Notes: a model not told the origin generated them from the sequence alone. 64,000 nt of DNA from Macrostomum lignano (GCA_002269645.1 NIVC01002595.1:1-64000); one strand, 5' to 3'; shown: positions 811 to 64,000, numbered from the stretch's first letter. Translations and numbers: made by a program.

Positions 811-1214
<404 letters not shown>

Positions 1215-2270: not shown

Positions 2271-2302
2271 AGTGACTGGGAAGAGCTGGACCGAGTCAGC
2301 TT

Positions 2303-2638
2303 ACCACACACGGCGTCCGTATTTCATATCTGTCAATCGCTAACTGGACTTTTCCTTCGCAACTCGAGCGGCAAACTAGCTGAACCCAATTGCCGCCTGC
2401 GGCTGTCGCGTCCTGATTGTGTTTGTCTTCACGGCGGCGCGGCCAATTTCGGAAACAATTTGCCTTCACGTGTGGCCACCGATTGACGGAATTGGTTTTG
2501 AAGCTGCTTGGGCACCCAATCAGCGAGCTCAGGCAGCGCCGAGTCCCCATCTGTGGACTCCGGCTGACAACAGTGCAAATCTGGTTGGCTCGCTGCCTGG
2601 TTTCCAACCCACCTCCCCTTCGGCCAGTGCTTCCCAGC
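2303..2638 (-). CDS. Possible internal coding exon of an unidentified Cys-containing protein
   Basis: Unique island between two arrays. One minus frame is open (..CLSSLIGCPSSF..ANCFRNW..LVCRSSCEG..RTPCV), ends at a strong donor GTG|gtaagc, and has a candidate acceptor ttttgaag|. No partner exons or homology recognised. Confidence 0.25.
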
Positions 2639-2822
2639 CTTCAAAATCGACACCGGACTGGGAGGATTAGAGAGGCTGCTACCAAACCCAGTCGACCTAA
2701 AATCAGTTTTTGCTTTATTGAAGCGCAAACTCGAGCAAGGAAACTCAAAGGTAAGATAGTTGCTTAACTTGTTTATCTCTCTGTGTTGTCTTTCGGTGAG
2801 AGAACTTCCACTAGAGTGAGTA

Positions 2823-3698: not shown

Positions 3699-4561
3699 CA
3701 TATCAGAGCTTGAAAGCAGGTATAAAAATACCAGAAAGGCTCTTGTCGATGCCTATCTAAAAATATTGCTATTGAAATTCCAATATTTCATGTAGAAAAT
3801 AGCTTGTGCTCCAATCATTGTCAATACTTTATATCAGTTTTCTAACAATCCTCTCTTGCATCGGAGCTTGACAACGGCTTGACAACCAAAAAACTATTTT
3901 GGAATAACTGAACTCGACGATTCCTAGCCACTGAGTAAAAATGCTCACCCAGTTAAAAAAGTTGCCTCTAAGTTTTTTACAACCTGCAGAAGACCAAAAT
4001 CCAGCTTCCGTCCCGGTTCTGTTGTTGGCAGTGGCATTTTCAGAATTCCAGTTGGCATCTGCAGTCAGCCGGAGCACTGAATGAATGGGTTTTGGGCGAC
4101 TGCTGTTAAAACTGCTTCTAAAAAGTGTAGACAATGCTTGCTTTGCTTAGTGGGCTGAGACGCAAAGCATTGGTATCTAGATAGCTGCTCGGAACAAAGG
4201 GGAGAGGAGAGTGACTGAAGGAATTGCTGACACAAAAACTCGCTCTTAACTGAGCCTCGTATTCGATTTGAAATGCTTAAATTTTCGACTTTCAATTTAT
4301 CGGCAAAGAAGACGCCAGCTGCGTCAGCAGTTTAGAGGTGCTTCAGGGGAATGGAATACTTTGTGCCTGCGTTTACCTTCTTTGTTGCGCGCTTCTGCAA
4401 GTCCTCTCGTGAGTGACTGAGAGAGCGGATCGCTACGTGTGATATGTTACGTATGACACAGGGAACACACGTAAAAAGACACATGGAGAAGAGCCTCAAA
4501 ACATATTAATACTTGAAAAGACACTCGGAGAGGTTTCACGGTAACTACGAGAGAGACTACG

Positions 4562-9075: not shown

Positions 9076-9606
<531 letters not shown>

Positions 9607-31281: not shown

Positions 31282-33427
<2,146 letters not shown>

Positions 33428-35204: not shown

Positions 35205-35250
35205 CCTATCTATCAGTCAATCTATCCAGCTATCTATCTATCTATCTATG

Positions 35251-35304
<54 letters not shown>

Positions 35305-35401
35305 CATCCATTTATTAATCTATCTATCTATCTACCTATCTACTTATCAATCAATCTCTGTCTGTCTATCTATCTATCTATCTATCCATCTATTTATCTA
35401 C

Positions 35402-35434
<33 letters not shown>

Positions 35435-36024
35435 CATCTATTTATCTACCTATCTATCTACCTATCTACTTATCAATCAATCTATCTGTCTATCTATCTA
35501 TCTATCTATCCATCTATCTATTAATCTATCTATCTATCTATCTATCCATCTATCCATCTATCTATTAATAATATCTATCTACCTATCTATCTGTCTATCT
35601 ATCTATCCATCTATCTATTAATCTATCTATCTATCTATCTACTATCTATCCATCTATCTATTAATAATATCTATCTACCTATCTATCTGTCTATCTATCT
35701 ATCCATCTATCTATTAATAATATCTATCTATCTATCTACCATCTATCCATCTATCTATTAATCTATCTATCTATCTATTAATCTATCTATCTATCTATCT
35801 ATCTATCCATCTATCTATTAATCTATCTATCTATCTATCTACCTATCTATCCATCTATCTATTAATCTATCTATCTATCTACCTATCTATCCATCTATCT
35901 ATTAATCTATCTATCTATCTATCTACCTATCTATCCATCTATCTATTAATCTATCTATCTATCTACCTATCTATCCATTTATCTATTAATCTATCTATCT
36001 ATCTATATATCTACCTATCTATCC

Positions 36025-36057
<33 letters not shown>

Positions 36058-36085
36058 CCTATCTATCCATCTATCTATTAATCTA
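35205..36085. repeat. (CTAT)n microsatellite
   Basis: Directly visible. Confidence 0.96.
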
Positions 36086-37149
36086 TACAACGTAGCCATC
36101 TATCTAATATATTAAACATAATAAAAATGATCCTCAATTAAAATACCTACATGTAGTTACTAAATGGTTAAATAAATTTATCAGCGATAGTAATGCTCTG
36201 CTGACAAATTAACTCCCAGCTGTCCTACAAGCCGAAATGTTTGGCACCTCTTGACTGCCTACAGCTACTCGTAGTCAGGTTTGCCCAGCGGCCATCCCAA
36301 TATTAATTCGAGAAGCCAACAAACGCGAAAAAGCTGCAGATTTCTCCGCCTCGAACACTCGGGTTAAAATCTGCTTAAATAAACAGACAAATTTAGCAAA
36401 GCCGAATTCCCACAGCAGCAGTTAGAAGTTTGCAAAAGTCAACGCGCCAAGTTCTATTAAAATTTGATATCGTATGCCTCTCCGGTGTTGACAGAACAAA
36501 CTCACTTACCGATCACGTGTTTAGCCTAGTGACCCAAAGCAAAGCAAAACTTGTATTGCTGTTCAAATTTGTTAATTGCATTGTTATTGCTGCTTGGAAA
36601 CTGACCATCTACAAGCTGCCAAAAAACCAAAATTAATTACATCGTATATTTCAAATTTGCGAATTGGCTACTAACAGTAGAAATAACGTAATTATAACGA
36701 TACATATAAGTAAAATTATTGAATAAAAAGCAATCAATTAGGAATGTATTTAAAGCACCGCGTTTCGCAGCTCATAAACCTTCGATAAGAGCGGAGAATA
36801 AACACTAATTATTAGCAAGATTTTAAATGCGCTTAGCCTATACCAGTGTCATTAAATCATTAGGAAGCCTGACAAACACAACTCACGCACATGGCTCAAT
36901 AACAAAGAGAAAATATAATACAAGTTCATATATTGACAGTAAAAGCTTGCAAAGTCTCCCCGAAATTTTTATCATTATTGTAATGCGCGTGTTTTTTTTG
37001 AAAACAGACTTTTTTGCGACTCTTTACGATTCCGCAACTCACGTGATGCGCTCGCGACTCAAAAGTCGCCTCTACGTCGCATTTCAGTCGTTTAGGTCGA
37101 TAATAATGGCCAGATGTGCAACCGACAGCTCAGCCGCAGCTATTGCGCG

Positions 37150-37526: not shown

Positions 37527-40930
<3,404 letters not shown>

Positions 40931-46216: not shown

Positions 46217-49200
46217 TCAGAGCAGCTCGTATTGGCGCAGGTGCATCCGCTGGATGATGTCGCGGCAGTCTTTGAACACCCGGCGAATATTCTCTGTGTC
46301 AACAGCGCAAGTGAAGTGCGGATAACAATAGTGCTGCTGGCTGGCATTGCGCTGATTGGCTGGCGTGACTGTGCTGATTTTCTGCGGATATCCGAATTCG
46401 GAGCTAGCGGTAGATTTGATATCTATAATATTGTAGCTAGCGGTAATTTCATATCTATAATATTGCAGCTAGCGGTAGATTTGATATCTATAATATTGTA
46501 GCTAGCGGTTGATTTGATATCTATAATATTGTAGCTAGCGGTAGATTTCATATCTATAATATTGTAGCTAGCGGTAGATTTCATATCTATAATATTGTAG
46601 CTAGCGGTAATTTCATATCTATAATATTGCAGCTAGCGGTAATTTCATATCTATAATATTGCAGCTAGCGGTTGATTTGATATCTATAATATTGTAGCTA
46701 GCGGTAGATTTCATATCTATAATATTGTAGCTAGCGGTAGATTTGATATCTACCAGTATAATATTGTAGCTAGCGGTAGATTTCATATCTATAATATTGT
46801 AGCTAGCGGTAGATTTCATATCTATAATATTGTAGCTAGCGGTAGATTTCATATCTGTAATATTGTAGCTAGCGGTAGATTTGATATGTATAATATTGTA
46901 GCTATCGGTAGATTTGATATCTATAATATTGTAGCTAGCGGTAGATTTGATATCTAAATGATTGTAGCTAGCGGTAGATTTGATATCTATAATATTGTAG
47001 CTAGCGGTAGATTTGATATATATCTACTGTTGTAGTTATGGGTATATTTGATATCTACTGTTGTAGCTATGGGTATATTTGAAATCTACTGTTGTAGATA
47101 TGGGTATATTTGATATCTACTGTTGTAGCTATGGGTAGATTTGATAGCTACTGTTGTAGCTATGGGTAGATTTGATAGCTACTATTGTAGCTATGGGTAG
47201 ATTTGATAGCTACTATTGTAGCTATGGGTAGATTTGATATCTCTATTTTGTAGCTATCCGCGAATTTTCATAACTATATTAATTTAGCTCGCGGCAGTTT
47301 TACACCGCTGATTGTGTAGATAGCGGCAGTTTTGGATTTCTATTTCAAGACTTAGCAGCTCTATTTGATTAAGTTTCTTCAAGTTATTACTTTTAGTAGT
47401 AAGAAGCAGAGAAAGGCCATTATTAATTATGCTAAATTCAAATATGGTCGAAGTCATCCTGAGCTAAAAATTGCTGTGACTCACCAAGAACTGATCTCTG
47501 ATAAAGTACTTCGCCCGAAGCACTTCCATGTCTTCAGAATCCGGATTGCTTACTGCACAGGCGAGTAGGGCGAAGCAGGAATGAAATAATGTAAGACGTC
47601 ATAATAATCGTAATTATAATGTCTGTTCAGAATCAGACATTCTCTTACAGAATGAAGTAAGGAGAGCCCGCTTAAAAAGTTTGGGACGAAAGCTTGGGAC
47701 ATAAAATGAGGTGCCATTAAATTATTCAAAGCTCTAGAGCGGCCCCGACACTGCAGAGTAGTGGAACTGCTCAAACACACTCGCGCATAGAGGCTGGGAA
47801 TGCTTTGAAGCGAGACGCCAAGTAGCTAGCAAAGATAAGCCAGCCTTACTAAATATAAGAACTGAGATCAATGGAGACCCTAGCAAAGTGCAAACTCTGA
47901 GTCAATTAATTTTCAAGCTTGTCAGCAAGTTAAATATAAGCTGACCTTCTAAATATCAAACTGAACCTAGCCTAAAAACCGGGGGATTATAATTAATATA
48001 ACAATTTGCTTACCACCTTCCGAAGGCAGATTGTAGTCCTTGTATTCGTGAAAGTAATGCTCTAATTTAGACTTGCCGGCCAGGATTTTCTCCGCTAGCA
48101 GATCCTGCTTATTCAGGAATAGGATCACGGAGATGGATCGCAGGTATCTGGAATTCATCATTGGCGAGTTTGGGACGGCTGAAATGTGCTGCAATTGAAG
48201 CTGAAAGGCTTGGCTATTGCGGTATGAAAAGCCTAATAAGTAAAAAATCAATCAGGTTAGCAGAGGCTACGGAAGTAAGCTCGAGGATCTGGAATGTTGG
48301 AACTCCTCAGCCTGAGGATCTGGAATGTTGGAACTCCTCAGCCTGAGGATCTGGAATGTTGGAACTCCTCAGCCTGAGGATCTGGAATGTTGGAACTCCT
48401 CACAGCCTGAGGATCTGGAATGTTGGAACTCCTCACAGCCTGAGGATCTGAGGTGTTGGAACTCCTCACAGCCTGAGGATCTGAGGTGTTGGAATTCCTC
48501 ACAGCCTGAGGATCTGAGGTGTTAGAACTCCTCACAGCCTGAGGATCTGAGGTGTTGGAATTCCTCACAGCCTGAGGATCTGAGGTGTTGGAATCACAGC
48601 CTGAGGATCTGAGATGTTGGAACTCCTCACAGCATGAGGATCTGAGGTGTTGGAATCACAGCCTGAGGATCTGAGGTGTTGGAATCACAGCCTGAGGATC
48701 TGAGGTGTTGGAACTCTTAACAGCCTGAAGATCTGAGGTGTTGGAATCACAGCCTGAGGATCTGAGATGTTGGAATCACAGCCTGAGGATCTGAGGTGTT
48801 GGAATCACAGCCTGAGGAGCTGAGATGTTGGAATCACAGCCTGAAGATCTGAGGTGTTGGAATCACAGCCTGAGGATCTGAGGTGTTGGAATCACAGCCT
48901 GAGGATCTGAGGTGTTGGAATCACAGCCTGGGGATCTGAGGTGTTGGAATCACAGCCTGAGGATCTGAGATGTTGGAATTACAGCCTGGGGATCTGATGT
49001 TGGAATCACAGCCTGAGGATCTGGAATGTTGGAATCACAGCCTGAGGATCTGAGATGTTGGAATCACAGCCTGGGGATCTGAGGTGTTGGAATCACAGCC
49101 TGAGGATCTGAGATGTTGGAATTACAGCCTGGGGATCTGATGTTGGAATCACAGCCTGAGGATCTGGAATGTTGGAATCACAGCCTGAGGATCTGGAATG

Positions 49201-50294
49201 TTGGAATTACAGCCTGAGGATCTGGAATGTTGGAATTACAGCCTGAGGATCTGAGATGTTGGAATTACAGCCTGGGGATCTGATGTTGGAATCACAGCCT
49301 GAGGATCTGGAATGTTGGAATCACAGCCTGAGGATCTGAGATGTTGGAATTACAGCCTGAGGATCTGAGGTGTTGGAATCACAGCCTGAGGATCTGAGAT
49401 GTTGGAATCACAGCCTGGGGATCTGAGGTGTTGGAATCACAGCCTGAGGATCTGAGATGTTGGAATTACAGCCTGGGGATCTGATGTTGGAATCACAGCC
49501 TGAGGATCTGGAATGTTGGAATCACAGCCTGAGGATCTGAGATGTTGGAATTACAGCCTGAGGATCTGAGATGTTGGAATCACAGCCTGAGGATCTGAGA
49601 TGTTGGAATTACAGCCTGGGGATCTGATGTTGGAATCACAGCCTGAGGATCTGGAATGTTGGAATCACAGCCTGAGGATCTGGAATGTTGGAATCACAGC
49701 CTGAGGATCTGAGATGTTGGAATCACAGCCTGAGGATCTGAGATGTTGGAATTACAGCCTGAGGATCTGAGATGTTGGAATTACAGCCTGAGGATCTGGA
49801 ATGTTGGAATCACAGCCTGAGGATCTGAGATGTTGGAATCACAGCCTGAGGAGCTGAGATGTTAGTCTGAGAAGAGTCGTACACACAATCGGTTACAGAG
49901 ATCGGAGCTTACTGGTGGACAGCAATAGAGGCATATTTATAATCGGTTAAGTACAACCAGACCTGAAATATAATCGCAGCATAAGAGCCGCATCGGAGAG
50001 AGAGATGTATATATACCATTGTATAGACTATATAATGCTATGCATGCAGACCCAGGCAATCAGAAGGCGCATATGTGCACACCTAGACAGCACAGCGAAG
50101 ACAGCAGCGAGAAAAGGGAGAAAGAGAGAGAGAGAAAGAGAGAGATGGGGAAAAGGAGAGGGGCTGGGATAAATGAATTTCCTTCGCTGCCTTCTTCACC
50201 CGAAGTCAGTAGCTACTCTCTCCCTCTCTCTCTCTCTCGCTTCAACCCTGAGACTGCTGCTCTCTTTTTTTTTTCCTACGTTCCAAAAGCGACC

Positions 50295-50325
<31 letters not shown>

Positions 50326-51354
50326 AGGGGAAGGATCGGCTCAATCCCTACTCAAGCTCCCGTCTTACCAAGGTCGGTCGGTGTCTCCCAGCAGTCTTAA
50401 GCCTACCCTGGCAAGCAAGGCGCAAAAGTTTGCAATAAGAGGGGGGGGGTGGGGCTGCAGGAATAGCGGATCGCATGGATGCTCTGGGATGTCGAGACAG
50501 ACAGACAGAGAGAGAGAGAGAAAAAAATGAGGCAAAATCTTTGAGTGAGGCTCGGACAGGACTGAAAATAAGGCTAGCTGATCTGACAGGGACGGGCCAA
50601 GAAGAGAGCACTGCGAGCCCGTTGGAGCTAAGAATATGCGGATGAGAAATATAGAAGGCTGGAAAGAAACGGACAGACAGACAGACAAGACAGAAATAGA
50701 GATGAGAAATGACACATACGATTGCATCTATAGCCAATAAATACACAGATTGTACAAATATAGTACTGAGTCGATACGCCAGCTACTAGTATATAAAAAA
50801 ATTGTAATAAAAAAACAGGAAGAAGGCCAATTATTCAGCAAGTGATGAAACTGCCTGAGATAGACGGCACATAGATCAGATCTGAGCAGCTTGAGAGCCC
50901 ATAGTAGAGGGATAAATAGAGAATGTCGCAGGCTAAAAAAAGATAGTGCGCCCTTTCATCATCAGCCGCGATGAGGCGAGAAAGATGCAAGTCGACCAGT
51001 CCAGCAACCCCTGCCCTTGAGTCCTCCGTTCTGCCACGCGTAATTAAAGACGCGACCGCCAGACCCAGGAAGGGTGCGCAGAGCAGAGCAGAGACCGATC
51101 CAACCCGTCTCAGCTGCCTCACCTTATTCAGCCGTATTCGCCCGCACACACCCGGCAATCAAGTCTTTATTTGTAATTTTGGCGCTAAGCTTCTGCGAAT
51201 GTCTGACATCACTGCTTTTCTTCGTCAAGTCTGCGGCTTAAAGCAGAATAAACCATTTTTCACAGCTCCATCAAAGTGTGGCTTTGTAAATCAATAATTG
51301 AAATACGCTCGTATATCTTAGTGCCTGTCTGTCTGTCCGTCCGTCCGTCTGTCC

Positions 51355-51442
<88 letters not shown>

Positions 51443-54400
51443 GCGAGCCGTGCCGGCAGCCCAGCGCTCCCCTCTCACCGGTTGGTCCAGATAGACTGGA
51501 ACAGGTCCAGGCTCTCCTTCAGCCGATTTTGAGACGGATCCTCGCGCAGCACCATGTTGTAGGATGAGGAGGCGGTCACAAAGATGATTGCGGTGACATC
51601 GTTAAAGCACTGAATCCATTTTCTGCGCTCCTCGCGCTGACCGCCAACGTCGAACATGTGAAACTGGACTTTGTCAACGCAGAACTTCGTCTCAAAGATG
51701 CCGGACGTGAGGACACGGCAGCGAAGGATGTCCTGCTCCGAAGGCTCGTAGTCGGCGCGACCGACCTCTTCGGCTTTGTCCAGAAAGCTGTTAGGGAGTC
51801 GGGATTTGGAAAATGCCTTTATTATGGCTGGAATACACTTGTAACAATATTGCCACTAGACTTGTAGGCAGCAATAGTTTCTATATAAAAAAATAATAAA
51901 TGCACTTTTTCATAATCATAATTCGTGAAAGAACGCCGCCGCGCGATTCTCAAATTACAAAGAAGGAAATGAGCGGAGCCGAAAAAATGAAGAGATGAAC
52001 GAGTCCAAAGACCGCCGGTATGCAAATCAATGCCAGAGAGGAGAGGCAAAACTGAGGCTAGGAAAGAAAAGAAAGTGCTCGTTCACTAGTGGCCAGGGAA
52101 AAAAACTTAATTAAATTTCTAGAGGCTTTCTCAGCTGTCGAAATTACACGCAGACTATACTATGGAATCTGGCATCTGTGCCTATTGCAGTTACTCGTAT
52201 AACTGGGAATGCAGCTTCGTATCTAGCGCAAAAGGCTCAAACCGCTTACCCTCAGCTATGCAGGCATAGCTATATTTGACATGACCCCCTCCCCTCAGCT
52301 ATACAGGCATAGCTATATTTGAAATTACCCCCTCCCCTCAGCCTTAGAGGCATAGCTATATTTGACATGACCCCCTCCCCTCAGCTATACAGGCATAGCT
52401 ATATTTGAAATTACCCCCTCCCCTCAGCTTTACAGGCATAGCTATATTTGACATGACCCCCTCCCCTCAGCTATACAGGCATAGCTATATTTGACATGAC
52501 CCCCTCCCCTCAGCTATACAGGCATAGCTATATTTGACATGACCCCCTCCCCTCAGCTATACAGGCATAGCTATATTTGAAATTACCCCCTCCCCTCAGC
52601 CATACAGGCATAGCTATATTTGACATGACTCCCTACCCTCAGCTATACAGGCATAGCTATATTTGACATGACCCCCTACCCTCAGCTATACAGGCATAGC
52701 TATATTTGACATGACCCCCTCCCCTCAGCTATACAGGCATAGCTATATTTGACATGACTCCCTCCCCTCAGCTATACAGGCATAGCTATATTTGACATGA
52801 CTCCCTCCCCTCAGCTATACAGGCATAGCTATATTTGACATGACCCCCTCCCCTCAGCTATACAGGCATAGCTATATTTGACATGACCCCCTCCCCTCAG
52901 CTATACAGACATAGCTATATTTGACATGACCCCCTCCCCTCAGCCATACAGGCATAGCTATATTTGACATGACCCCCTTCACTCAGCTATACAGGCATAG
53001 CTATATTTGACATGACTCCCTCCCCTCAGCTATACAGGCATAGCTATATTTGACATGACCCCCTTCACTCAGCTATACAGGCATAGCTATATTTGACATG
53101 ACCCCCTCCCCTCAGCCATACAGGCATAGCTATATTTGACATGACCCCTCCCTTCCTTGCTTCAATCTCCTTCGACTTTGTTCACCTTCATTCTTCCCTC
53201 TCTACTCCACCGCCGTCTCGCTGCACTCCACCTACAGCTTGCAGCCATATCACCTTCAGTAGGGCGTGAAAAATATAGGCAGTGGCGAGGCTAAAAAAAA
53301 GAAGAAGTCCCCTGTCTCCGGTTCTCTTCTATAGGCGCAGAGAAATTTCTGTAGCAGACACACCAAGAAGCGTACAACGAGAGAAATTAGACCGAGAGAG
53401 GGAAGGCAGAAAGAATAATGCAATCATGCATATAGTACTGAAAAAGTACATATTCTGGGATTTTGGTCAGCCTTTTTTTAGCTGCCAAATTAGACTCTTT
53501 CCCCATATGCATAGCATAGCATAGTTTTTAAAGCCCGGCCAAGCAGATATTCTCTAACAAAATTTCCTATTAAAATAATACCCAAAAATGTCTTCAAAAG
53601 TTCCCTTTTAGGAGAAGCAATAAGTAATGAGCCGAAGGCAGCTCCCTGGGATAGTTCTGTAGCCAAAAAAAGCTGAGGTGTGCAAAGAAGGGCAAATCAA
53701 GCCAAGGGACCATCCCTGCGCAGAGTGCGGTAGCCAGTTAGAGTCTTAGAAAAGACCCAAGGCAGAAAGGAGGAGGGAGGATCTTCGCACACGGCAGTGC
53801 AATAAAGTACCAATAGGACAGAGGTTGGCGCAGTTCCTACACCCCAGGCAAGGGGAAACGAACTGGACTTTTAAGGCGGGGGGGGAGATATGAGGAGACA
53901 GAGTAAGGCTGGGGGGAGGCTGAAAGAAAGGGGAACGCAAGAGTTGCGGGCACGAGGAGAGTGGGATAGCCCAGGGGGGTGGAAGGATTCAGGCGTACAA
54001 GAACTTTGCCAGATTTGCAAATCGCCGGGAAAGTGCAGCTAAGCTAGGGGGGGGGGGAGGGAAGAGAAATAACTGGGGATAGCCGGCCGGGGGAGGGAGA
54101 ATATTCCCCTTCTCGATACCTCCCGAACAGTTCGCGTCCCCTCCGCTGCTCTCCGCATGCCGCCGCGGCCTGGCCCTTTCTAAAAAAATGTTGGATCTAA
54201 GCCTGCGGCAGCCCCGAGCGCCTCGGGAAGAAATATGATGAAGAGAGAAAGGGATGCATGGCGGCCCAAAAGAGAAAAAAGTCCCCCCCCCATATTAGCG
54301 CTCCGCCTACGTCTCCCATATAGAGGCCAGCCTGTTACTAGAATGGAAGAAGAGATGCAGCGGCTGAGGCACAAGTAGATACGGGAGCATAGTTTGCCCA

Positions 54401-57400
54401 TATTTAGCGTACTGGGGCGCACACAGGCCGCATCTGCTAACAGATGTGCTATTTACGACGCAATTTAAAATTTTTTTTTATATTCCATTAACAATTCGTA
54501 GCGAACTCACAATTAAGTCTGATTGATAAGCTCAATCACCCGTGTGAGCGTGTTGTGAGTGCGTGCCTGTGTACAGTATTGACGAGCTTGTGTATGAGCT
54601 CAGTAGGGTGGTCCACAAATTATTGTAAGAACATTGTTTTTGAATACATTGCGATTAATCCATTGCGACTGTAATTAAGACCATAGGAAGTTAGGATGCA
54701 AAATATAACTTACTGTATGCATTAGTAATCAGTGGACAATAGTGACAGAAATGGTTTCACTTTAATAGGCAAATATGACAATTGTAAAGTAAAATTTTAA
54801 GACTGTCACTAAATGGGCCGTTTTTACCACCATTTTTCATGCGAAACTTGTTGCATTGAGCAACCTCTTCGAAATTTTAGAAAGGACAATTTTTTATGTG
54901 AGCCATTCTTTTATCAAACATTAGACATTTTGAGGGGCTCAAGTTTCACTTCTTAAAAACAATGTTTTTACATCGTGTGGGTGTGAAAAAGTTTTGAAAT
55001 CAAGAATTTAATTCTCTATTGATGCCAACTGGAACATGGGCAGTTCTTCACTACTCACTATTTAGCGCAGTCGATCAGCTGGTACTCGTTAATTCTCTAT
55101 TGATGCTAACTGGAACATGGGCAGTTCTTCACTACTCACTATTTAGCGCAGTCGATCAGCTGGTACTCGTTAATTCTCTATTGATGCTAACTGGAACATG
55201 GGCAGTTCTTCACTACTCACTATTTAGCGCAGTCGATCAGCTGGTACTCGTTAATTCTCTATTGATGCTAACTGGAACATGGGCAGTTCTTCACTACTCA
55301 CTATTTAGCGCAGTCGATCAGCTGGTACTCGTTAATTCTCTATTGATGCCAACTGGAACATGGGCAGTTCTTCACTACTCACTATTTAGCGCAGTCGATC
55401 AGCTGGTACTCGTTAATTCTCTATTGATGCTAACTGGAACATGGGCAGTTCTTCACTACTCACTATTTAGCGCAGTCGATCAGCTGGTACTCGTTAATTC
55501 TCTATTGATGCTAACTGGAACATGGGCAGTTCTTCACTACTCACTATTTAGCGCAGTCGATCAGCTGGTACTCGTTAATTCTCTATTGATGCTAACTGGA
55601 ACATGGGCAGTTCTTCACTACTCACTATTTAGCGCAGTCGATCAGCTGGTACTCGTTAATTCTCTATTGATGCTAACTGGAACATGGGCAGTTCTTCACT
55701 ACTCACTATTTAGCGCAGTCGATCAGCTGGTACTCGTTAATTCTCTATTGATGCCAACTGGAACATGGGCAGTTCTTCACTACTCACTATTTAGCGCAGT
55801 CGATCAGCTGGTACTCGTTAATTCTCTATTGATGCTAACTGGAACATGGGCAGTTCTTCACTACTCACTATTTAGCGCAGTCGATCAGCTGGTACTCGTT
55901 AATTCTCTATTGATGCCAACTGGAACATGGGCAGTACTTCACTACTCACTATTTAGCGCAGTCGATCAGCTGGTACTCGTTAGACCGGTCAAACGAGGCC
56001 CGCACCCCGGCATCGTTCCACAGCTTGATAGTGTATTGGAAAAACTCCGGCGGATAATCGAAATCCGGTTTAGTAGCCTCGTTCTGCACATAGTTAATGT
56101 ACTCTTCGTAGTCTGCGTGCTCCAGCGTCACTGGTGGGCTCAGGTTGCTCATAGCGCCAGTTATTGACAGGATTGCATCGCGGATGTTCTTCTTGATGTC
56201 CATAATTTTCTGGCGCTTTTCTCTGGCAAACATAGCCGCAGGGGTGGAGATATTTTATTGGGGAGCACGAGAATTTCCCCAAAAAAGTTTTTCACCGAGG
56301 TTTGCCCGCCGAGATATCTCCGTCAAGATTTTCCCGCAGCGAGGTTTTCCCGCGAGAGTTTTTCCAGTTGGAATTTCGAGTAAAATCTAGTCTATAGACA
56401 ATGTTGGACTAGATTAGAACTAGACTAGATTAGAACTAGACTAGAGTAGATTTCAAATCGGATTGGATTTGACTTGAAATACCGACTGGAAAACCCTGCG
56501 GGAAAACCTCGGCGGGCAAACCACAACGGGAAAACTTCCTGTGGGAAATTCTAATAGACATTTTATTGGCTATGCACAAAGGCCTACTGTGTGGGGGGAT
56601 TCACCTGCAACCCGTAGCCACCCCTGAAGGACACTGAGGATTAGCGGCACCCACAACTGAAGGACACTGAGGATTAGCGGTACCCACAACTGAAGGACAC
56701 TGAGGATTAGCGGCACCCACAACTGAAGGACACTGAGGATTAGCGGTACCCACAACTGAAGGACACTGAGGATTAGCGGTACCCACAACTGAAGGACACT
56801 GAGGATTAGCGGTACCCACAACTGAAGGACACTGAGGATTAGCGGCACCCACAACTGAAGGACACTGAGGATTAGCGGCACCCACAACTGAAGGACACTG
56901 AGGATCATAATAAGTTGAAGTTTTTACTTACTCTGGACTGAAGCCATTGATATGCAGAATTCGCATCTGTTTAACAATAGTACTTTTGCCAGATTCTCCA
57001 GCTCCTAAAATAATTGCATTATTGAAATTAATAACAGAGTAACTTACTAAATTTCACTTGTAATTCTGCTTAATAAACTAATTAAAGTATCTTACAAAAC
57101 AGTATTAAAATAAATTTAATTTCATATATACCATAGCAAAGATCATGCTAAGCTTATATTAGAAAAGTTTTAGCCTTACTAAGGTTTATGCCATGTATAT
57201 CAAAGGAAAAAACTTTATAAGCTTGCAATTGACAAATACAATGATTTTTGCTAATTGCATTATGTAAAATTTTTAGATTATTTGTTTTATTATTGATTAT
57301 AAATTTATTTGAGTAAATTTTAAAGATAGTTTATGGACTTACAATATAAGTAACCTAATATACTAAATAAATATACAAATAATATTAATTCCAATCAAAT

Positions 57401-60400
57401 AAAGTACTAGGAAGGTTTCCTAGTACTTTATTTGTTATTTTTCAAGTGCATATAGCTCGTAGTACTAATTGATTCATTTATCCACATAGGATATATAATA
57501 TAATCATAGAATTGTTACATAAAAATTGCTATGTGCTAAAATAGTCTAATTTTTGTTCAGAATTCTAGTAACAAGGATTCTAAACTAGTCTGCATAGATC
57601 CCCATTTGCTCTAATCTACAATGATTAAAGGCTCATTCCATATAAGCATGGTCGTAACATGACAGGCTATTTTTACTTATAAAATGAAATATAATAATAG
57701 AATATACTAAACCAATATTTTAAATGAAAGATAATTTTGTCAAAAATATTTTTATAGAGTTTCATGTAGATATCATCATTAGTATAGATGCTATTAAACC
57801 TTGAATGGCACTTATGGTCGTAACAACAGGATTTTTGACATATAGAAACTAAAAGGTAAAAGTCTTATAACATTTTTATTTTTGATATTTTGCAATACAT
57901 TTTTTAAAATTTGACTCAGAACATCTTTAGTAATCATACTCTTTTTGTAGAATATATAAACTCAAAAAGGCAACAAAGATACAAAAGAAAAGGCAGCCTT
58001 ATGGTCATAACATTATGGTCGTAACATATTTTTTTCTGTCAATTTAGTAACTTTGAGGTACCAATATATTAAAAATATAATAGATTATTTGGTCACCAAT
58101 ACTTTTATCTGATGATGCAAGTACTATACTTTTATCTATAGTTTGTTTCAACCTTCCAAAGCTTTCTATTTGTTTTTAAAAGGTACACAAACTTAATGAT
58201 GTCTTTTGCTTAGAAAAATGTCTAAATTTTTACGAAAATGACTTTTTGCCACTTGATAGCATACTAATCTAACATTTTATCATTCATTTATTCTTAGATT
58301 GTAGATATTACACATAAAAAACATTTGGTAAAAAAATTGGCTGATAAGGCAATGGCAAGCAAAAATATTGACTTTTTTCTATTTTCCAAAAATGTCCATC
58401 TTATATGGAATGAGCCTAAAGATGTTCTTAATAACAAATATTTGCATATCATAGGGTATAAGGCACCCTTATAATGGGTGAAATGGTATGTAAAATTGTT
58501 TTTTCAATATGCCATATTTATGATTTCTTTCTATATGCAATAGTTTTCAAACATTATTTTTTCAAATTTGGACCTTGGTAATATTGGAAATAGTTAAGGA
58601 TTTGACAAGATTTCAATCTCAAAGCAATCTCTAGCACCAAATCCTTTAGGTTAATTGGTACTTTATCCCCTGAGCCTTGGTCTAATAGCCACATTTATTA
58701 ATAGCCATTATACCCCCCTAGTCTATTGGCTAAATTCATTGATGACTACTGGAAGCACAAACTTTACCAGCTAAAAAATTGCCAGCCAAATGTTGCTGGC
58801 TGGAAAGTTGCAAGCTAGAAAGTAGCAAGTTGCCTAGAATAAGGAGTAGTGCAGTATATATAGCAATATATTGTTTAGGAAACTTTAAGTTTAGGAAGTT
58901 TAGGAAACTTCAACTTTATTAGCACTCTTTACTAGAGGTTTGGTTAAATTTTGGGAACTATTCTAGCTGCCTAACTTACTACACTATTATATAGGTTTAA
59001 CACTTTCAGTTTATTATTATATAATAAACAAGAGATATAAGAGAGTAGACAGAAAATAAAGAGAAAAAAAGTAAAAAAAGACAAGAAAAAAAGATATGAG
59101 AGGAGAGAAAAGAGAAGAGAGAATATAGGGAAAAGAAGAAAGAGAAGAGAGAAAAAAGAGTAAAGAAGAGATAAGACAATACCATTGTCATGAAGGTAGC
59201 ATTTGCCAGGGAAAAATTTAGTATATATAAGGGTCTAAGATGCACTTAGCATACAATCACAGTGCATACAGGGGATCTACAATGCTCTTGGTGAATAATC
59301 AGTGCACACAAAAGATCCCTGTTGCACTTGGCATATACTTGTAATCATGGCAGAGATTAAGATTTCTAGTGCATGTGATGCACAATTGTTTTTGGCAAAA
59401 TTGTTATAAAATACACAATTATTAGTTAAACTAACTTGCAGTTTATAAATGTATAATTTCTCATTTAATGAAACAGATCATCTTGAAATTCCCTGAAAAT
59501 TTGTTTTGGTGCACTCTATGGCACCTTTTTGACTATAAAAAAGTAGAGAAAAGAAAGAAGGATAAAAGAAAAAGGAGACAGATAAGAGTAAAAAAAAGAG
59601 AGAAGGTTCAAAAGCTTCAAATCTTAGTTTAACACGAATTTACTCGAATCTCCAGCTGTTAACAAGCTTTTGTTTTACTTTTAACATGAGTTTGGATTCA
59701 AGAATATATGCAAAAACAATTCCAGGATTGGAATTTAGCAGGTAAATTCATAACTTCAGATAATATATAATAAAAATGGCATAACTTCAGTTTCCTATTT
59801 TTTGGAGTTTTGGATTACTTTCTAGCATTTCTAGATTAGCAATTCAACAACCTGCTTCATTTCACTGTTTCAGATTACTATCTTGTGTGACTTAGATTTT
59901 GACAAGTAAATTTCAATTTTAGAAAACTTTCTTTCAAAAGTCATTTAAGTGTCCAGTTTTGAAATTTATCATCTAATTTTAATTTTCTTAGAACTTTGTA
60001 TGAATCAATGATATTGTTATAATTTTTTAAAGTTTATTTAGATTTAATAAGTTTTATATAATAGCATATTTATATAACTATGAATTTTTTTAGAAATTTT
60101 GCAAAACTTTAAAGGGCTACAAAAGCATGTGCTGATATGTTGTATATTTTGTGTATATTATAATACATGATACATGTACATATATGTATATAGTTTATGC
60201 AATTGCAATTATTGCTTAATGATGATATATATATTAACTTGATATACATTGAACAATATTACACAAAGAAAAAATGAGAACAAAAGAAATTGCCATGTAT
60301 AGAAGAGTATATATAATAAAGGAGTTACATGTCTATCTTCTCCATGTAGTCCGTGTTTCTATAATATTGTAATTGCATAATAGACAAAGATATTTTCCAT

Positions 60401-61554
60401 CTACCTAAGTCTTGGCAATATTGTTAGAATTATCCTTTTATACAATTGCTACTACTTTATAATATACTATTTTATAAACTATATACATATATAAAAATTA
60501 ATAAAAGGTAACTAGATTTTTTGTTTTTGTATCAAAGAAGTATTTGCATTCAAAATGGCAATAAGAAACTTTTACTTATCTAGTGATGCCTTAAGTGTAC
60601 AAGTATATACTATATATAAATTTATAATATAATTTAAAATTTATACTATATATGTTTTGTATAAGCAGTAAATAAAGGAAATAAGTAAGTGTTGGTCAAA
60701 TAAAATTTTGTTTTTATAAAAAATTTTCTTGAAGCTTTTGGTTTCAAAAGAAAATACATTATTGAAATATCATTAATTACTTTTAAATTTAAGACTAGAA
60801 GTTTAAAAAATCCAGAATATAATTTATAATAAGAAACAAAATACAAAGTTATGCCAAAAATATTAATAAAAACCTTAAGACAAAATTTATATGATACTAA
60901 ATAACAATATGCTATTTTTCTTTCATTAATATATCATTTATTATATATCTGTCTTTCTAAATGTAGTTTAAATTAAAACCAACTAGTCTTCTAGATCATA
61001 TAGTTTGAAAGGCAACATATGCCAGGATTTCCTGGCATATAATAAAGGTCATATTATTTTTCAGCATACATCAGGGTATATCCTAGCATACACGACACAG
61101 AAGATACATTGTGAAAAATGACAATTTTTTTGTATTGATATACAAACCCGGCATACAAACAAGGTCTTGTCATTTTTGTGGCATTAAACCTACTATACAC
61201 AAATACACGATGCAAACCATGGATATTTTTCATAATTCAATTTTAGATATTTAAATTGTTTTGAAAATTGATGCTACAAATTTTGCTATAAATAATTTAA
61301 CTAGACAATTAAAGTATGCTATTATCATATTATCAAAATCAATTCACAAAAAAAGCATTAATATAATAGACTATATAGGCTAACCTTAACTGAATGCTGA
61401 TTAAACCAATAAAAATAAATACATTTAAAAGCATACCTAATAATAGTAGTCGATGGGTTGACTTGTAATCTTTTCGCTCTTTTTCGAGCTTCTTTTCAAT
61501 ATTTTTTGATTGATCAGTTTTTTCATTATTCTTTTTGCCACTGAAACACCCCAT
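46217..61554 (-). CDS. gnas: Guanine nucleotide-binding protein G(s) subunit alpha, 379 aa, 7 coding exons
   Basis: Exons 61554-61437, 57004-56932, 56222-55950, 51787-51479, 48147-48014, 47552-47485, 46381-46217 total 1140 nt with consistent phases. Motifs [70 protein letters not shown] and C-terminal [10 protein letters not shown] are typical of G-alpha-s. Confidence 0.96.
46404..47245. repeat. 33-bp minisatellite (GATTTGATATCTATAATATTGTAGCTAGCGGTA) in G-alpha-s intron 6
   Basis: Visible array grading to a ~31-bp variant. Confidence 0.94.
48282..49863. repeat. ~27-31-bp minisatellite (CACAGCCTGAGGATCTGAGATGTTGGAAT) in G-alpha-s intron 4
   Basis: Visible array. Confidence 0.96.
51325..51443. 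repeat. (CTGT)n microsatellite near the G-alpha-s exon 4 donor
   Basis: Directly visible. Confidence 0.95.
52250..53150. repeat. 43-bp minisatellite in G-alpha-s intron 3
   Basis: Unit CAGCTATACAGGCATAGCTATATTTGACATGACCCCCTCCCCT. Confidence 0.96.
55010..55981 (-). repeat. 81-bp x12 tandem repeat made of the G-alpha-s exon 3 end plus its 5' splice site
   Basis: 972 bp = 12 x 81. The minus-strand unit begins AACGAGTACCAGCTGATCGACTGCGCTAAATA|GTGAGT ([11 protein letters not shown]). Confidence 0.96.
56270..56552. mobile_element. Degenerate foldback/MITE-like element in G-alpha-s intron 2
   Basis: Nested inverted matches: GAATTTCCC/GGGAAATTC, GGTTTGCCCGCCGAG/CTCGGCGGGCAAACC, AGGTTTTCCCGC/GCGGGAAAACCT. 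Confidence 0.55.
56622..56905. repeat. 33-bp minisatellite in G-alpha-s intron 2, abutting the AT-rich block
   Basis: Unit CCCACAACTGAAGGACACTGAGGATTAGCGG[C/T]A. Confidence 0.95.
57630..58416. mobile_element. Non-autonomous DNA transposon (MITE), 787 bp
   Basis: Perfect 17-bp terminal inverted repeats GGCTCATTCCATATAAG, flanked by TAAA on both sides (57626-57629 and 58417-58420). Internal repeats of TATGGTCGTAACA. Confidence 0.75.
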
Positions 61555-64000
61555 GGCAGAACCCACAGGGAGGCAGCAATCTGCCTAAGTATTACAACTT
61601 TAAAAACCAATCATAAAAAATATCGTTCTTTATTTATCAAAATCGAAAGAAATTCAGCTTTTAACTGCAGGAACTTTATCGTGATATAGAATCTGATAAA
61701 TATATTGTGCAATATTGTGTATTTATTGTAAATCTTCTAACAAAACGAATTAATGACTTAGTCCAGAAAATGGCTACTTGACTAAATTACCACTAAATTT
61801 TTACTCGCTGTTGAGAAAGAATAAAACCAGGGATTCTATTCACCTAAACATATTATAAAGTATAAACTACTTGGTTTGGTACTACAAGTTCTACGAAACT
61901 ACATAGGAACAAAACTTAAAAAAGCACCGCAGTGTATTGATTTTTATTTAAGCTAAATAATAGAATTTTTATTATTATTTACTTTTAGCTACTGTGCAAA
62001 AAAGAAAAAATACAGATATAATATTTTTACTGCTATTAATGTTGTATTTTAGTTATAAACAAGTATTTTGTGAACAAATTTGACTTTTGTTTTGCGCTCG
62101 GTAATGTCACCATCAAGATCAGAATATACAGCCCATTGTAAGTTGTCAAAATTTGGGTCTATTTTTTTCAGGCTATTATTATAATTGTATAAGTTTTAAT
62201 TTTTTGTTGCAACAATTAGCTCACAGCTGCTTAACGTCAATATATATTTTTTAGATTTGTTATATAGAATTATATATACAACACAATCTTTAGCTTATGT
62301 AGACTTCACCAAAAACCTCTTTGCCGAATTCATTTCAAATAGGCCCTACTAAGTACTAAATAGAGATTTTGGCTTCAATAATAGGGAGTGTTGTTGGGCA
62401 ATGTGCTGAAGATCCTTCTAAGTTCATTTTTCAGTTGTCAACTTTGGGACTTATTTTAACTGCATTTATAATTGCAAAACAATTCTTTCTTTTGCTGCTA
62501 GTGCTGATGTCTAGTGCTGATTTTTTCATGCATTCAGGAACAATTTTTAATATGCAACAATTGCCACTTATGCAACATTCTTTTGTTATGTAATTTCTTT
62601 GCACATAGGCTATATTAGGGACTCCAGTGAGATTTTGAAACTTAAAAATTTATATATTTTCAGATATGTATCTGATAGAGGACAATAACAGCATCACAAA
62701 ATGGCTTCACTTATTAAATTTAGTTGAGTAATAAAAAAGTTATAGCATTTTTTGTGCCCAAAAAATTACGTTTTTTAGATAGGAAAAATACATTATAGAT
62801 TGTTGCCATTAGATGTACGAAAACAAAATTTTTCACTTTTTGTTGTCATATCTTTTTTGCTATTCAACATACAATATTGAGTCTGGTATCATTTTAAAGA
62901 CCAAGCAGTTCTACATAAGATTAACAAATTGTTTTTATTCTTTCTAATGTATCTTTCTTGGGGTTTGCATTTGAATTTTTAAAAAGTGAAAAATGCACAT
63001 CAAAAATAGAGCAAAATTAAAATTTCAAATGACTATTATTTAAAAGTTAATTGCTTTTTCTGAAATCTTTTTTATTTGTTTACTCTACAATATATAAAAG
63101 TATATATTTTTATACCATTTTTTCCTATATATTGACAAAGGTTAAAAAATTCACCAATTTTGTGACTTTTTTGCTACTGGAACTTGATAGCATATCTTAA
63201 AATTGCACATTTTTCAACTTTGAATGATTATATTTTTTAGACTAATGAATATATATAAAGTTTGATTTGTTTTTTTAATGAAAAACATATGAAAATGTTT
63301 TTTTTGTGTACTTTGGTTTATTTAAAAGCTCTTGTTCTTTTTTTCCAATATTATTGCTTGTTGAGTAGCTGCAACTGAAGACTGAAGTTAGCATATATTT
63401 AATGCTTATTGTCTTTACACACATAATGTATATTGTCTGCTTTGCTTTTTAACTGTAAAACATATAGGTAAATAATTGTTGATACTATTGTCTTGTATAT
63501 TTTTTGATTGAGCCTATCCTTATTGTAAAATTGTATATTGTGAATAAAGTTACCGATGAACATTTCTGTAAACAAGTGTAAAGAAGTATTTAAAAATATA
63601 TTGTACTTAAAATTGTATATTGTGAAGTTGCTTATTAAACTTACAAATGGAATAAACACAATTTCTTATGAAATTCAGTTCATTTTTATGGGAGTTTGAA
63701 TTGCAGACCAAGGTTACGTGCATTCAAGGGGTCATTTATTGGGATTGCAATTGCTATAGCTCAATAAGCTAAAGCATACATTTATTTGTATTATTTTGCC
63801 TTCAAAACTAATTTGCAATGGTAAAACGTCTTCTTTTTGGTTAAGAAAAGCCATAATAAGCCACTTTTTATATAAGTAGTATGTAAGTAGTATCGCTACT
63901 AAAAAGCAAACATTGCTGCTGCTCCTCGGCGGATGTATGTGGAAAGATATAAAAGTGCTGTGAAGAATTCCTATAAGTTCCTCTATTAAATGCAGTAGAA

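What the first reader, a model, noticed from the sequence alone, without database searches (positions are those of the whole stretch)
56905..64000. Abrupt genome-compartment switch inside intron 2 of a single G-alpha-s gene
Seen: at ~56905 the sequence changes from repeat-saturated, moderate-GC DNA to 7 kb of very AT-rich DNA with no minisatellite or microsatellite array. Exons 1-2 of G-alpha-s lie in the AT block and have 19 of 64 codons ending in G/C (hand count). The first 45 codons of exon 4 have 34 of 45. The exons still splice in order and in phase into one 379-aa protein. Inference: either (a) a real sharp isochore-like or recombination-regime boundary, or a recombined/horizontally replaced 5' end, running through one gene, or (b) a chimeric assembly joining two organisms or haplotypes. 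The intron 2 position appears to be ancestral in animal G-alpha-s genes, so phase agreement alone does not exclude (b).
Basis: partly seen in the sequence, partly recalled or inferred. Interest (0 to 1): 0.7.

Follow-up and report, generated by a model that had tools for sequence, protein, structure and literature searches.

The report
AT-rich CpG-poor domain inside flatworm gene
The sharp base-composition switch inside this flatworm (Macrostomum lignano) G-alpha-s gene is real and evolutionarily old, not an assembly error: the gene's start sits in an AT-rich, CpG-depleted, repeat-free domain that looks like a footprint of germline DNA methylation or a different local substitution regime.

Summary
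The window is Macrostomum lignano contig NIVC01002595.1, positions 1-64000. GC drops from about 0.5 to about 0.25 at 56903-57005. Tandem repeats fall from 38% to 2.6% of the sequence. Codons ending in G/C are 19/64 in exons 1-2 and 217/315 in exons 3-7 (p = 1e-8).

It is not a chimera. A second copy on a 950-kb contig, 3-5% diverged, has the identical junction. Three copies of an ancient paralogue (dS about 1.8-2.0) show the same AT-rich start and GC3-rich rest. Both halves of the protein have that paralogue as nearest relative (85% and 86% identity), so the 5' end is not foreign.

The exact step at 56905/56906 is the edge of a 33-bp minisatellite. Together with a palindromic element it fills intron 2.

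New here: the AT block is strongly CpG-depleted (34 observed, 128 expected; intron 1 o/e 0.15). Other non-repeat DNA in these loci, including AT-rich stretches, has o/e about 0.9.

Best reading: an old boundary, anchored to the gene, between two substitution regimes. The 5' domain is probably germline-methylated and/or low in GC-biased gene conversion. This mechanism is inferred, not measured.

Moderately interesting; a new member of a known kind.

The parts
56906..64000 (.). AT-rich (GC about 0.26), CpG-depleted, tandem-repeat-poor unique domain. It continues beyond the window to at least record position 71554.
   Evidence: GC. CpG 34 observed vs 128.5 expected (shuffle sd 10, minimum 94). 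Tandem repeats 2.6%. No dispersed or internal repeats. No Rfam hits. No ORF longer than 86 aa. Upstream continuation has CpG o/e 0.28.
61437..61554 (-). G-alpha-s exon 1 (ATG at 61554; MGCFSGKK...HRLLLL), GC3 0.31
57005..61436 (-). Intron 1, 4432 nt, GC 0.262, CpG o/e 0.15 (11 observed, 75.7 expected)
56932..57004 (-). G-alpha-s exon 2 (P-loop, GAGESGKST...), GC3 0.29. Donor GTAAGT at 56931.
56906..56931 (-). The only native 5' intron-2 sequence: 26 nt, GC 0.23
56624..56905 (.). 33-bp minisatellite, 8.5 copies here and about 15.5 in the second gene copy. Its edge is the composition step.
56270..56552 (.). Imperfect nested palindrome (foldback/MITE-like) that fills the rest of intron 2
55950..56222 (-). 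Exon 3, GC3 0.67, 20 CpG in 273 nt (not depleted)
55008..55982 (.). 81-bp minisatellite, 12 copies. Its unit contains the last ~33-36 nt of exon 3 plus the splice donor.
51479..51787 (-). Exon 4, GC3 0.75, 27 CpG
48014..48147 (-). Exon 5, GC3 0.62
47485..47552 (-). Exon 6, GC3 0.57
46217..46381 (-). Exon 7 including the stop codon, GC3 0.69

Best explanation
The switch is a genuine, long-maintained boundary between two substitution regimes inside one Macrostomum lignano G-alpha-s gene. The promoter region, exon 1, the long intron 1 and exon 2 lie in a domain of unique, repeat-poor DNA at an AT-rich, CpG-poor equilibrium: GC about 0.26, CpG o/e 0.15-0.3, GC3 about 0.30. From exon 3 onward the exons stay GC3-rich and CpG-rich, and the introns have been filled by minisatellites and other insertions of moderate GC.

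SHOWN: the boundary is reproducible in independent gene copies. It predates an ancient duplication (dS about 2). It acts on intron, flank and synonymous sites alike. Its razor-sharp position is the edge of a minisatellite that, together with a palindromic element, makes up almost all of intron 2.

INFERRED: the 5' domain is, or long was, methylated at CpG in the germ line. M. lignano keeps DNMT1 and DNMT3 and has low-level 5mC. The domain also escapes whatever GC-favouring force acts on the rest of the gene and on neighbouring genes, most plausibly GC-biased gene conversion linked to recombination. CpG decay alone can lower GC by only about 3 points, so a second AT-ward component is needed. 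The scarcity of tandem arrays in the block would follow from the same chromatin or recombination state, or from selection on a regulatory first intron.

The confidence of 0.6 is for the whole statement. That the boundary is real and old is about 0.95; the methylation and/or gene-conversion mechanism is about 0.45.
For: Independent copies. L001 (NIVC01000087.1) is collinear with the window's contig at 95-99% identity with kb-scale indels. It has the identical exon 2 / 26 nt / minisatellite junction, with a different copy number.

Paralogue. Paralogue B (P0002; L003-L005) has the same profile. Intron 1 has GC 0.27. GC3 is 0.32 and 0.46-0.50 for exons 1-2, then 0.80, 0.74, 0.67, 0.48 and 0.73 for exons 3-7. 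Its non-coding DNA cannot be aligned to copy A, and dS is 1.99 for exons 1-2 and 1.77 for exons 3-7. The two compositions are therefore maintained independently at equilibrium.

CpG. The block has 34 CpG against 128.5 expected; intron 1 has o/e 0.15. In non-repeat 500-bp windows the AT block has o/e 0.30, its upstream continuation 0.28 and paralogue intron 1 0.25. The other 144 windows have 0.89, and the 39 of those with GC below 0.40 have 0.90. CA/TG o/e is 1.17 in the block and 1.08 outside it. Exons 3-4 are as old as exons 1-2 but have CpG o/e above 1, so sequence age alone does not explain the depletion. A copy-specific 2.9-kb insertion inside the domain still has CpG o/e 0.75-0.93.

Literature. 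[quoted passage not shown]

Yardsticks. The snail Lymnaea G-alpha-s gene has intron CpG o/e 0.14-0.53, GC 0.28-0.40 and GC3 0.31-0.44 throughout. The fluke Opisthorchis, from a lineage that lost DNMT1/3, has intron CpG o/e 0.83-0.85.

The neighbouring GH65 gene has GC3 0.83 in its first 64 codons, so there is no general 5' AT ramp.
Against: No methylation, recombination or polymorphism data were available, so the mechanism is inferred from composition alone. Exons 1-2 themselves are not clearly CpG-depleted (4 observed, about 6 expected), though the numbers are small. Typical invertebrate gene-body methylation covers most of the transcribed region; here exons 3-7 escape, and in copy A the depleted domain extends at least 10 kb upstream of the ATG. 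In paralogue B the upstream DNA is CpG-normal, so the domain extents differ between the paralogues. A third paralogue (P0005, L006) lacks the pattern. Only about 170 kb of non-redundant M. lignano DNA was sampled, all of it chosen around G-alpha-s genes, so how common such domains are is unknown.
Confidence: 0.6

Rival explanations
1. Age-only model. The AT block is simply old unique DNA that has reached the genome's AT-biased, CpG-poor mutational equilibrium. Everything to its left is young repeat or transposon DNA plus exons held GC-rich by selection. There is no regional difference in mutation, methylation or conversion.
For: Most DNA left of the boundary is tandem arrays or insertions (38% tandem repeats). 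Both paralogues' intron 2 was invaded independently by different elements. Copy-specific insertions inside the block still have normal CpG. Native intron-2 flanks in paralogue B are AT-rich and lack CpG on both sides of the insertion.
Against: Exons 1-2 and exons 3-7 are equally old (dS about 2 in both), yet their synonymous sites sit at GC3 0.30 and 0.69. Exons 3-4 keep CpG o/e above 1. Tandem-repeat-free intron 5 (GC 0.41, CpG o/e 0.69) and the 2.7-kb 3' flank (GC 0.36, CpG o/e 1.01) do not resemble the block. All 39 AT-rich non-repeat windows elsewhere have CpG o/e about 0.9.
Confidence: 0.15
2. Selection model. The AT-rich composition is functional. Intron 1 and the upstream region form a regulatory block kept free of repeats, and the first 64 codons use AT-ending (rare) codons as a translational ramp or for weak mRNA structure.
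For: The pattern is tied to gene architecture (start to exon 2) in two ancient paralogues on different contigs. Tandem arrays are almost absent from intron 1 in both.
Against: No conserved non-coding sequence is detectable between the paralogues. L001 and L002 diverge as much inside the block (95-97% identity) as outside it, and the block tolerates 0.8-2.9-kb indels. The third paralogue and the neighbouring GH65 gene show no 5' AT-ending codon bias. Selection on codons would not explain the 4-6-fold CpG depletion of intron and upstream DNA.
Confidence: 0.12
3. Assembly chimera or contamination: the AT block comes from another organism or was mis-joined at the minisatellite.
For: The junction lies at a tandem repeat, a classic place for misassembly. 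The dinucleotide signature differs at CpG. Read-level data could not be inspected.
Against: The identical junction is present in a 950-kb contig carrying a copy 3-5% diverged. The same architecture occurs in three copies of the paralogue. The exons splice in phase to a protein identical to a transcript-based annotation. The N-terminal 64 aa are closest to the M. lignano paralogue. The unusual GpC excess (o/e 1.65 in the block, 1.37 outside) is shared by both sides.
Confidence: 0.02
4. The 5' end (exons 1-2) was replaced by recombination, gene conversion or horizontal transfer from a different, AT-rich source gene.
For: There is a sharp break in codon composition exactly at an intron.
Against: dN is 0.069 for exons 1-2 and 0.082 for exons 3-7, and dS is 1.99 and 1.77, against the paralogue. 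Identity to the paralogue is 84.8% and 86.3% for the two parts, and no better donor appears among 120 top homologues. The paralogue has the same break, so any replacement would have to predate the duplication.
Confidence: 0.02

Closest known systems
Mosaic germline CpG methylation footprints of invertebrate genomes (CpG o/e depletion of methylated domains, as in molluscs, annelids, Ciona and honeybee)
   Same: The block shows 4-6-fold CpG depletion with a mild TpG/CpA excess, directly next to CpG-normal DNA. The species retains DNMT1 and DNMT3. The composition of the block matches the whole G-alpha-s gene of a snail.
   Different: Only the promoter, intron 1 and exon 2 part is depleted, while exons 3-7 are CpG-rich. 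In copy A the domain runs at least 10 kb upstream of the ATG. The GC drop (to 0.26) is larger than CpG decay can produce. Methylation at the locus has not been measured.
Isochore-like GC-content domains in which GC3 tracks flanking non-coding GC (vertebrate isochores; GC domains of Hymenoptera), usually attributed to GC-biased gene conversion
   Same: Intron, flank and third-codon-position GC shift together. The contrast is stationary over a long time, since the paralogues have saturated dS. The boundary is sharp.
   Different: The domain is only about 9-15 kb in copy A and about 2.5 kb in paralogue B, not hundreds of kb. The boundary lies inside a gene and at the same intron in both paralogues, which suggests anchoring to gene architecture rather than to chromosome position.
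RIP-generated AT-rich isochores of fungi (e.g. Leptosphaeria maculans)
   Same: Sharp-edged AT-rich blocks lie next to GC-equilibrated DNA.
   Different: There is no RIP signature: TpA o/e is 0.90 and CA/TG is 1.17 rather than depleted. The block is unique sequence, not repeats. It contains functional exons. RIP is not known in animals (own knowledge).
Mammalian GNAS complex locus (orthologous gene; differentially methylated alternative first exons that splice onto exon 2). Recalled from memory; a lead only.
   Same: It is the orthologous gene, and the peculiar (possibly methylated) domain ends just after exon 2.
   Different: No alternative first exon, antisense transcript or imprinting is in evidence here: there are no ORFs or RNA-family hits in the block, and only one N-terminus occurs among M. 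lignano hits for this gene.

Membership tests
G-alpha-s (Gs/Golf class heterotrimeric G-protein alpha subunit) | Full-length G-alpha domain, with best matches annotated as G(s) alpha across animals | tested here: met
   379 aa; PF00503 is precomputed for the identical protein. The named proteins among the 120 best hits are nearly all annotated G(s)/G(olf) alpha, at 64-74% identity and 96-100% coverage.
G-alpha-s (Gs/Golf class heterotrimeric G-protein alpha subunit) | Conserved motifs and intron positions (N-terminal MGC, P-loop GAGESGKST, intron after ...NGF..E) | tested here: met
   The sequence shows MGCF... and GAGESGKST. The intron-2 position is shared by all three M. lignano paralogues. 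It aligns to the recalled human sequence at ...NGFNGE (the human exon boundary is from memory).
Assembly chimera / contamination | The junction exists in only one assembled sequence | tested here: not met
   The identical junction is in L001, a 950-kb contig that is 95-99% identical with indels.
Assembly chimera / contamination | The two sides have different phylogenetic affinity | tested here: not met
   Both halves are closest to the M. lignano paralogue P0002, at 84.8% and 86.3%, with equal dN and dS.
Assembly chimera / contamination | Read-depth discontinuity or no spanning reads | not testable with these tools
   No read data were available. Only indirect support exists: the deposited gene models derive from RNA-seq and transcript assemblies.
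Mosaic CpG-methylation footprint | CpG o/e strongly below that of neighbouring DNA of similar GC, with TpG/CpA excess | tested here: met
   o/e is 0.26-0.30 in the block, 0.90 in other AT-rich non-repeat windows and 0.15 in intron 1. CA/TG is 1.17 against 1.08.
Mosaic CpG-methylation footprint | DNMT1/DNMT3 present and 5mC detectable in the species | not tested
   Literature only: PMC11292947 and PMC9246332, both citing Wasik et al. 2015. The primary paper is not held.
Mosaic CpG-methylation footprint | 5mC actually present on this domain in the germ line | not testable with these tools
   No methylome data were available.
Mosaic CpG-methylation footprint | Depletion extends over the gene body, including exons | tested here: not met
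   Exons 3-4 have CpG o/e above 1. Exons 1-2 have 4 observed against about 6 expected, which is inconclusive.
Isochore-like GC domain | GC3 covaries with the GC of flanking introns and intergenic DNA | tested here: met
   Exons 1-2 have GC3 0.30 with flanks at GC 0.21-0.32. Exons 3-7 have GC3 0.57-0.75 with flanks at 0.32-0.59.
Isochore-like GC domain | Domain length of hundreds of kb | tested here: not met
   The AT-rich stretch is about 9 kb (about 15 kb by CpG) in copy A, about 13 kb in L001 and about 2.5 kb in paralogue B.
RIP-type AT isochore | TpA excess with CpA/TpG depletion, on repeated DNA | tested here: not met
   TpA o/e 0.90 and CA/TG 1.17. The block is unique sequence.

The most novel reading that the evidence does not exclude
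The block is a sharply bounded, germline-methylated and recombination-cold chromatin domain. It is anchored to the promoter, first intron and exon 2 of G-alpha-s, and has been maintained at two paralogues since before an ancient duplication. This would give the first sequence-level view of how DNA methylation is patterned in a free-living flatworm: 5'-restricted, ending within one short intron. It would also hint at an old link between the region upstream of exon 2 of G-alpha-s genes and methylation.
Probability: 0.35. Interest if true: 0.55.

Novelty: new member of a known kind. Interest (0 to 1): 0.4.

Why it matters
It removes a suspected misassembly from a model-organism contig. It also shows that M. 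lignano carries kb-scale domains with a vertebrate- or mollusc-like CpG-depleted signature next to CpG-normal DNA, with a boundary that can cut through a gene and persist through an ancient duplication. [quoted passage not shown] CpG o/e segmentation of this genome, starting from this locus, therefore gives a cheap, testable prediction of where 5mC sits. The locus is also a clean natural experiment: the same protein, two regimes, two paralogues. That makes it useful for separating mutation bias, biased gene conversion and codon selection in a repeat-rich genome.

Tried and rejected
1. Chimera or contamination: rejected.
2. Foreign or replaced 5' end: rejected.
3. RIP-like process: rejected on dinucleotide indices.
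4. [quoted passage not shown]: only partly true. Non-repeat DNA left of the boundary has GC 0.36-0.64 and normal CpG.
5. General 5' codon ramp: rejected, because the GH65 neighbour and paralogue P0005 lack it.
6. Conserved non-coding elements between the paralogues' AT blocks: none found by sensitive blastn.
7. Transposon or dispersed-repeat content of the block: none found in about 200 kb of other M. lignano DNA, and no internal repeats apart from one 39-nt palindrome.
8. Structured RNAs in 55000-64000: no Rfam hit. No ORF of 80 aa or more with any sign of coding.
9. Strand skews indicating transcription-coupled mutation: no consistent GC or AT skew in the block.
10. The primary methylation paper (Wasik et al. 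2015, PMC4603488) is not held. Further literature searches added nothing.
11. Yardstick look-ups for Lingula and Lineus orthologues were not on record. Lymnaea and Opisthorchis were used instead, with only part of their exons recovered by tblastn.
Full report
IDENTITY OF THE WINDOW. The 379-aa product of the gene is 100% identical to BOX15_Mlig032566g1 of the free-living flatworm Macrostomum lignano. Locus L002, fetched for that protein (NIVC01002595.1, 36217-71554, reversed), is base-for-base identical to window 36217-64000. The window is therefore positions 1-64000 of that 72-kb contig of assembly Mlig_3_7. This genome is known to be more than half repetitive, with 15% simple or tandem repeats. 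The sequenced DV1 line carries duplicated chromosomes, which leaves about 180 Mb of the assembly in copies at least 95% identical (PMC5730564).

- GC per kb is 0.44-0.50 over 48-57 kb and 0.205-0.300 over 57-64 kb. In 100-nt windows the fall from 0.53 to 0.22 takes about 150 nt.
- A two-segment likelihood change point falls at 56903-56906, tied with 57005. These are the two ends of exon 2 plus its 26-nt intron stub.
- Tandem Repeats Finder covers 38.3% of 1-56905 and 2.6% of 56906-64000.
- The gene is on the minus strand with seven GT-AG exons that join in phase.
Exons 1-2 (19/64) against exons 3-7 (217/315) gives Fisher p = 1.1e-8, and p = 1.3e-8 after stratifying by amino acid.

WHAT THE SHARP EDGE IS. 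The exon-2 donor (GTAAGT, G at 56931) is followed by only 26 nt of AT-rich intron. Next comes a 33-bp minisatellite (56624-56905, 8.5 copies), then an imperfect nested palindrome of about 290 nt (56270-56552), and a few tens of nt later the exon-3 acceptor. Almost all of intron 2 is inserted repeat, and the step at 56905/56906 is its edge. The underlying change is nonetheless real. Exon 2 (GC3 0.29) and exon 3 (GC3 0.67, GC-ending from its first codons) differ across that one intron.

NOT A CHIMERA.
- The identical protein is encoded on three contigs. L001, in a 950-kb contig, is collinear with L002 at 95-99% identity and has 0.8-2.9-kb indels, so it was assembled from different molecules. It carries the same exon 2 / 26 nt / minisatellite junction, with about 15.5 repeat units including variant units.
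- The same GC profile is seen in three copies of a paralogue, P0002 (87% aa identity; L003-L005). GC is 0.23-0.31 from the ATG through intron 1, then about 0.5 after exon 2.
- Exact gene models give GC3 per exon of 0.31, 0.29 | 0.67, 0.75, 0.62, 0.57, 0.69 for copy A and 0.32, 0.46-0.50 | 0.80, 0.74, 0.67, 0.48, 0.73 for paralogue B.
- In B, intron 2 keeps about 170 nt and about 150 nt of AT-rich native sequence on either side of a different GC-rich insertion of about 820 bp. The two paralogues were therefore invaded independently.
- The deposited gene models come from RNA-seq and transcript assemblies. This indirectly supports the exon 2 to exon 3 splice.

NOT A FOREIGN 5' END. Among the 120 best homologues, both the N-terminal 64 aa and the C-terminal 315 aa have P0002 as nearest relative after self, at 84.8% and 86.3%. 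Nei-Gojobori distances between A and B are dS 1.99 and dN 0.069 for exons 1-2, against dS 1.77 and dN 0.082 for exons 3-7. The two halves share one history. Because synonymous sites are saturated and the non-coding DNA of A and B cannot be aligned, the shared contrast is not inherited sequence. It is two compositions maintained independently at each locus. A third, more distant paralogue (P0005, L006) lacks it: exon 1-2 GC3 is 0.55-0.59 and regional GC is 0.38-0.50.

A SECOND SIGNATURE: CpG DEPLETION.
- The block has 34 CpG against 128.5 expected (2000 shuffles: mean 128, sd 10, minimum 94), while GpC is over-represented (212).
- Intron 1 has 11 CpG against 75.7 expected, o/e 0.15. The 2.4 kb upstream of the ATG has o/e 0.41, and 18 of the 34 CpGs cluster around exon 1.
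- Non-tandem-repeat DNA to the left has CpG o/e 0.92.
- Across about 170 kb of non-redundant M. lignano sequence, non-repeat 500-bp windows give the following. The AT block has GC 0.262 and o/e 0.30 (n=11). Its continuation beyond the window has o/e 0.28 (n=9). Paralogue-B intron 1 has o/e 0.25 (n=5). All other windows have GC 0.468 and o/e 0.89 (n=144), and the 39 of these with GC below 0.40 still have o/e 0.90.
- By CpG, the domain runs from 56906 to at least record position 71554 in this contig, and spans about 13 kb in L001, where the upstream part of the locus (positions 1-4000), which holds a ribosomal-protein-S3 gene, is CpG-normal. In B it is limited to ATG through intron 2.
- A 2.9-kb L001-specific insertion inside the domain still has o/e 0.75-0.93.
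- CA/TG is mildly raised (1.17 against 1.08). TpA is not raised (0.90), so there is no RIP-like signature. Apart from CpG, the two sides share an unusual GpC excess (1.65 and 1.37), as expected for one genome.

MECHANISM. What is shown: the boundary is real, old, tied to the same intron in two paralogues, and affects intron, flank and synonymous sites together. What is inferred is the following.
[quoted passage not shown] A 4-6-fold CpG deficit with TpG/CpA excess is the classical footprint of germline CpG methylation.
- As yardsticks, the G-alpha-s gene of the snail Lymnaea stagnalis has intron CpG o/e 0.14-0.53, GC 0.28-0.40 and GC3 0.31-0.44 along its whole length. Molluscs have mosaic gene-body methylation.
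- The orthologue of the fluke Opisthorchis felineus has intron CpG o/e 0.83-0.85. Parasitic flatworms lost DNMT1/3.
- The M. lignano gene thus looks "snail-like" up to exon 2 and "fluke-like" in CpG after it.
- CpG decay alone cannot take GC from about 0.40 to 0.26. It accounts for roughly 0.03 (own arithmetic). A second AT-ward component is needed. The most plausible is that the 5' domain escapes a GC-favouring force, such as GC-biased gene conversion, that keeps GC3 at 0.6-0.8 in exons 3-7 and in neighbouring genes.
- An age-only explanation fails because exons 3-7 are as old as exons 1-2 yet are rich in both CpG and GC3.
- A purely selective explanation (translational ramp, regulatory intron) does not account for the CpG-poor intron and upstream DNA. 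It has no support from conservation or from other genes.

COMPARISON WITH KNOWN THINGS. The feature behaves like a small compositional domain, or mosaic-methylation footprint. It meets the CpG-depletion and GC3-flank covariation criteria. It fails the isochore size criterion and the whole-gene-body criterion, and the direct methylation test could not be done. It is not RIP, not a chimera and not horizontal transfer. The gene itself is an ordinary, already annotated G-alpha-s.

VERDICT. Reading (a), a real boundary, is supported. Reading (b) and the replaced-5'-end idea are rejected. The added CpG signature makes the locus a modestly interesting, testable pointer to how methylation and substitution regimes are patterned in this flatworm. 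It remains a single-locus instance of a known class of phenomenon, with the mechanism unmeasured. Interest 0.4.

Noticed in passing
window 55008-55982 (overlaps exon 3 at 55950-55982): An 81-bp minisatellite (12 copies, 99% matches) has a unit containing the last ~33-36 nt of exon 3 ([12 protein letters not shown] against the exon's [12 protein letters not shown]) plus the splice donor. Intron 3 therefore starts with about 11 extra copies of the donor site. The second gene copy (L001) has only about 5 units.
   Followed up: partly
window introns 2-6 (46382-56931); L003-L005 introns 2-6: Tandem arrays fill most of almost every intron downstream of exon 2. They start 27-100 nt after the donor (or overlap the exon end) and stop 20-75 nt before the acceptor. 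The two paralogues carry completely different arrays. Only intron 1 (and intron 5 of copy A) is spared.
   Followed up: partly
window 56270-56552: An imperfect nested palindrome of about 290 nt (foldback/MITE-like), with arms up to 43 nt, lies between the minisatellite and exon 3. No other copy was found in about 250 kb of M. lignano sequence.
   Followed up: partly
window 57630-58417, 62615-64000 and about 60125-60133: There are kb-scale indels between the two gene copies inside the AT block. Two segments are present here but absent from L001. A 2.9-kb segment is present only in L001 (L001 11562-14430; GC 0.35-0.39, near-normal CpG, no significant ORF).
   Followed up: partly
window 57396-57434: A 39-nt near-perfect palindrome in intron 1. 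It is the only internal repeat detected in the AT block.
   Followed up: no
window 37527-40930 (minus strand): The neighbouring gene, a glycoside-hydrolase-65 family gene (Pfam PF03632, 944 aa), is very GC-rich (GC up to 0.73; GC3 0.83 in the first 64 codons). A microsatellite lies in or next to its coding sequence: TRF gives unit CTGT on the + strand at 39966-40116, and the run reads as DRQT repeats in frame with the gene. Whether it is coding or intronic was not resolved.
   Followed up: no
window 31282-33427, 35206-36086, 9076-9606: Very long microsatellites: (TTAG) about 533 copies, (CTAT) about 220 copies and (GTA) 177 copies. They cause the extreme GC-skew values in the composition profile.
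   Followed up: no
L003 and L005 (NIVC01001502.1, 5931-36680 and 192427-220994): Two copies of the paralogue gene lie in opposite orientation about 170 kb apart on the same contig, with a third on another contig. Together with three contigs for copy A, this fits the known chromosome duplications of the DV1 line.
   Followed up: no
L001 1570-2925: In the second gene copy a ribosomal protein S3 gene lies about 7 kb upstream, divergent from G-alpha-s. L001 positions 1-4000, which include it, are CpG-normal and the CpG-poor domain begins downstream of them. The corresponding upstream sequence of the window's contig (L002 1-2330) does not match L001.
   Followed up: no
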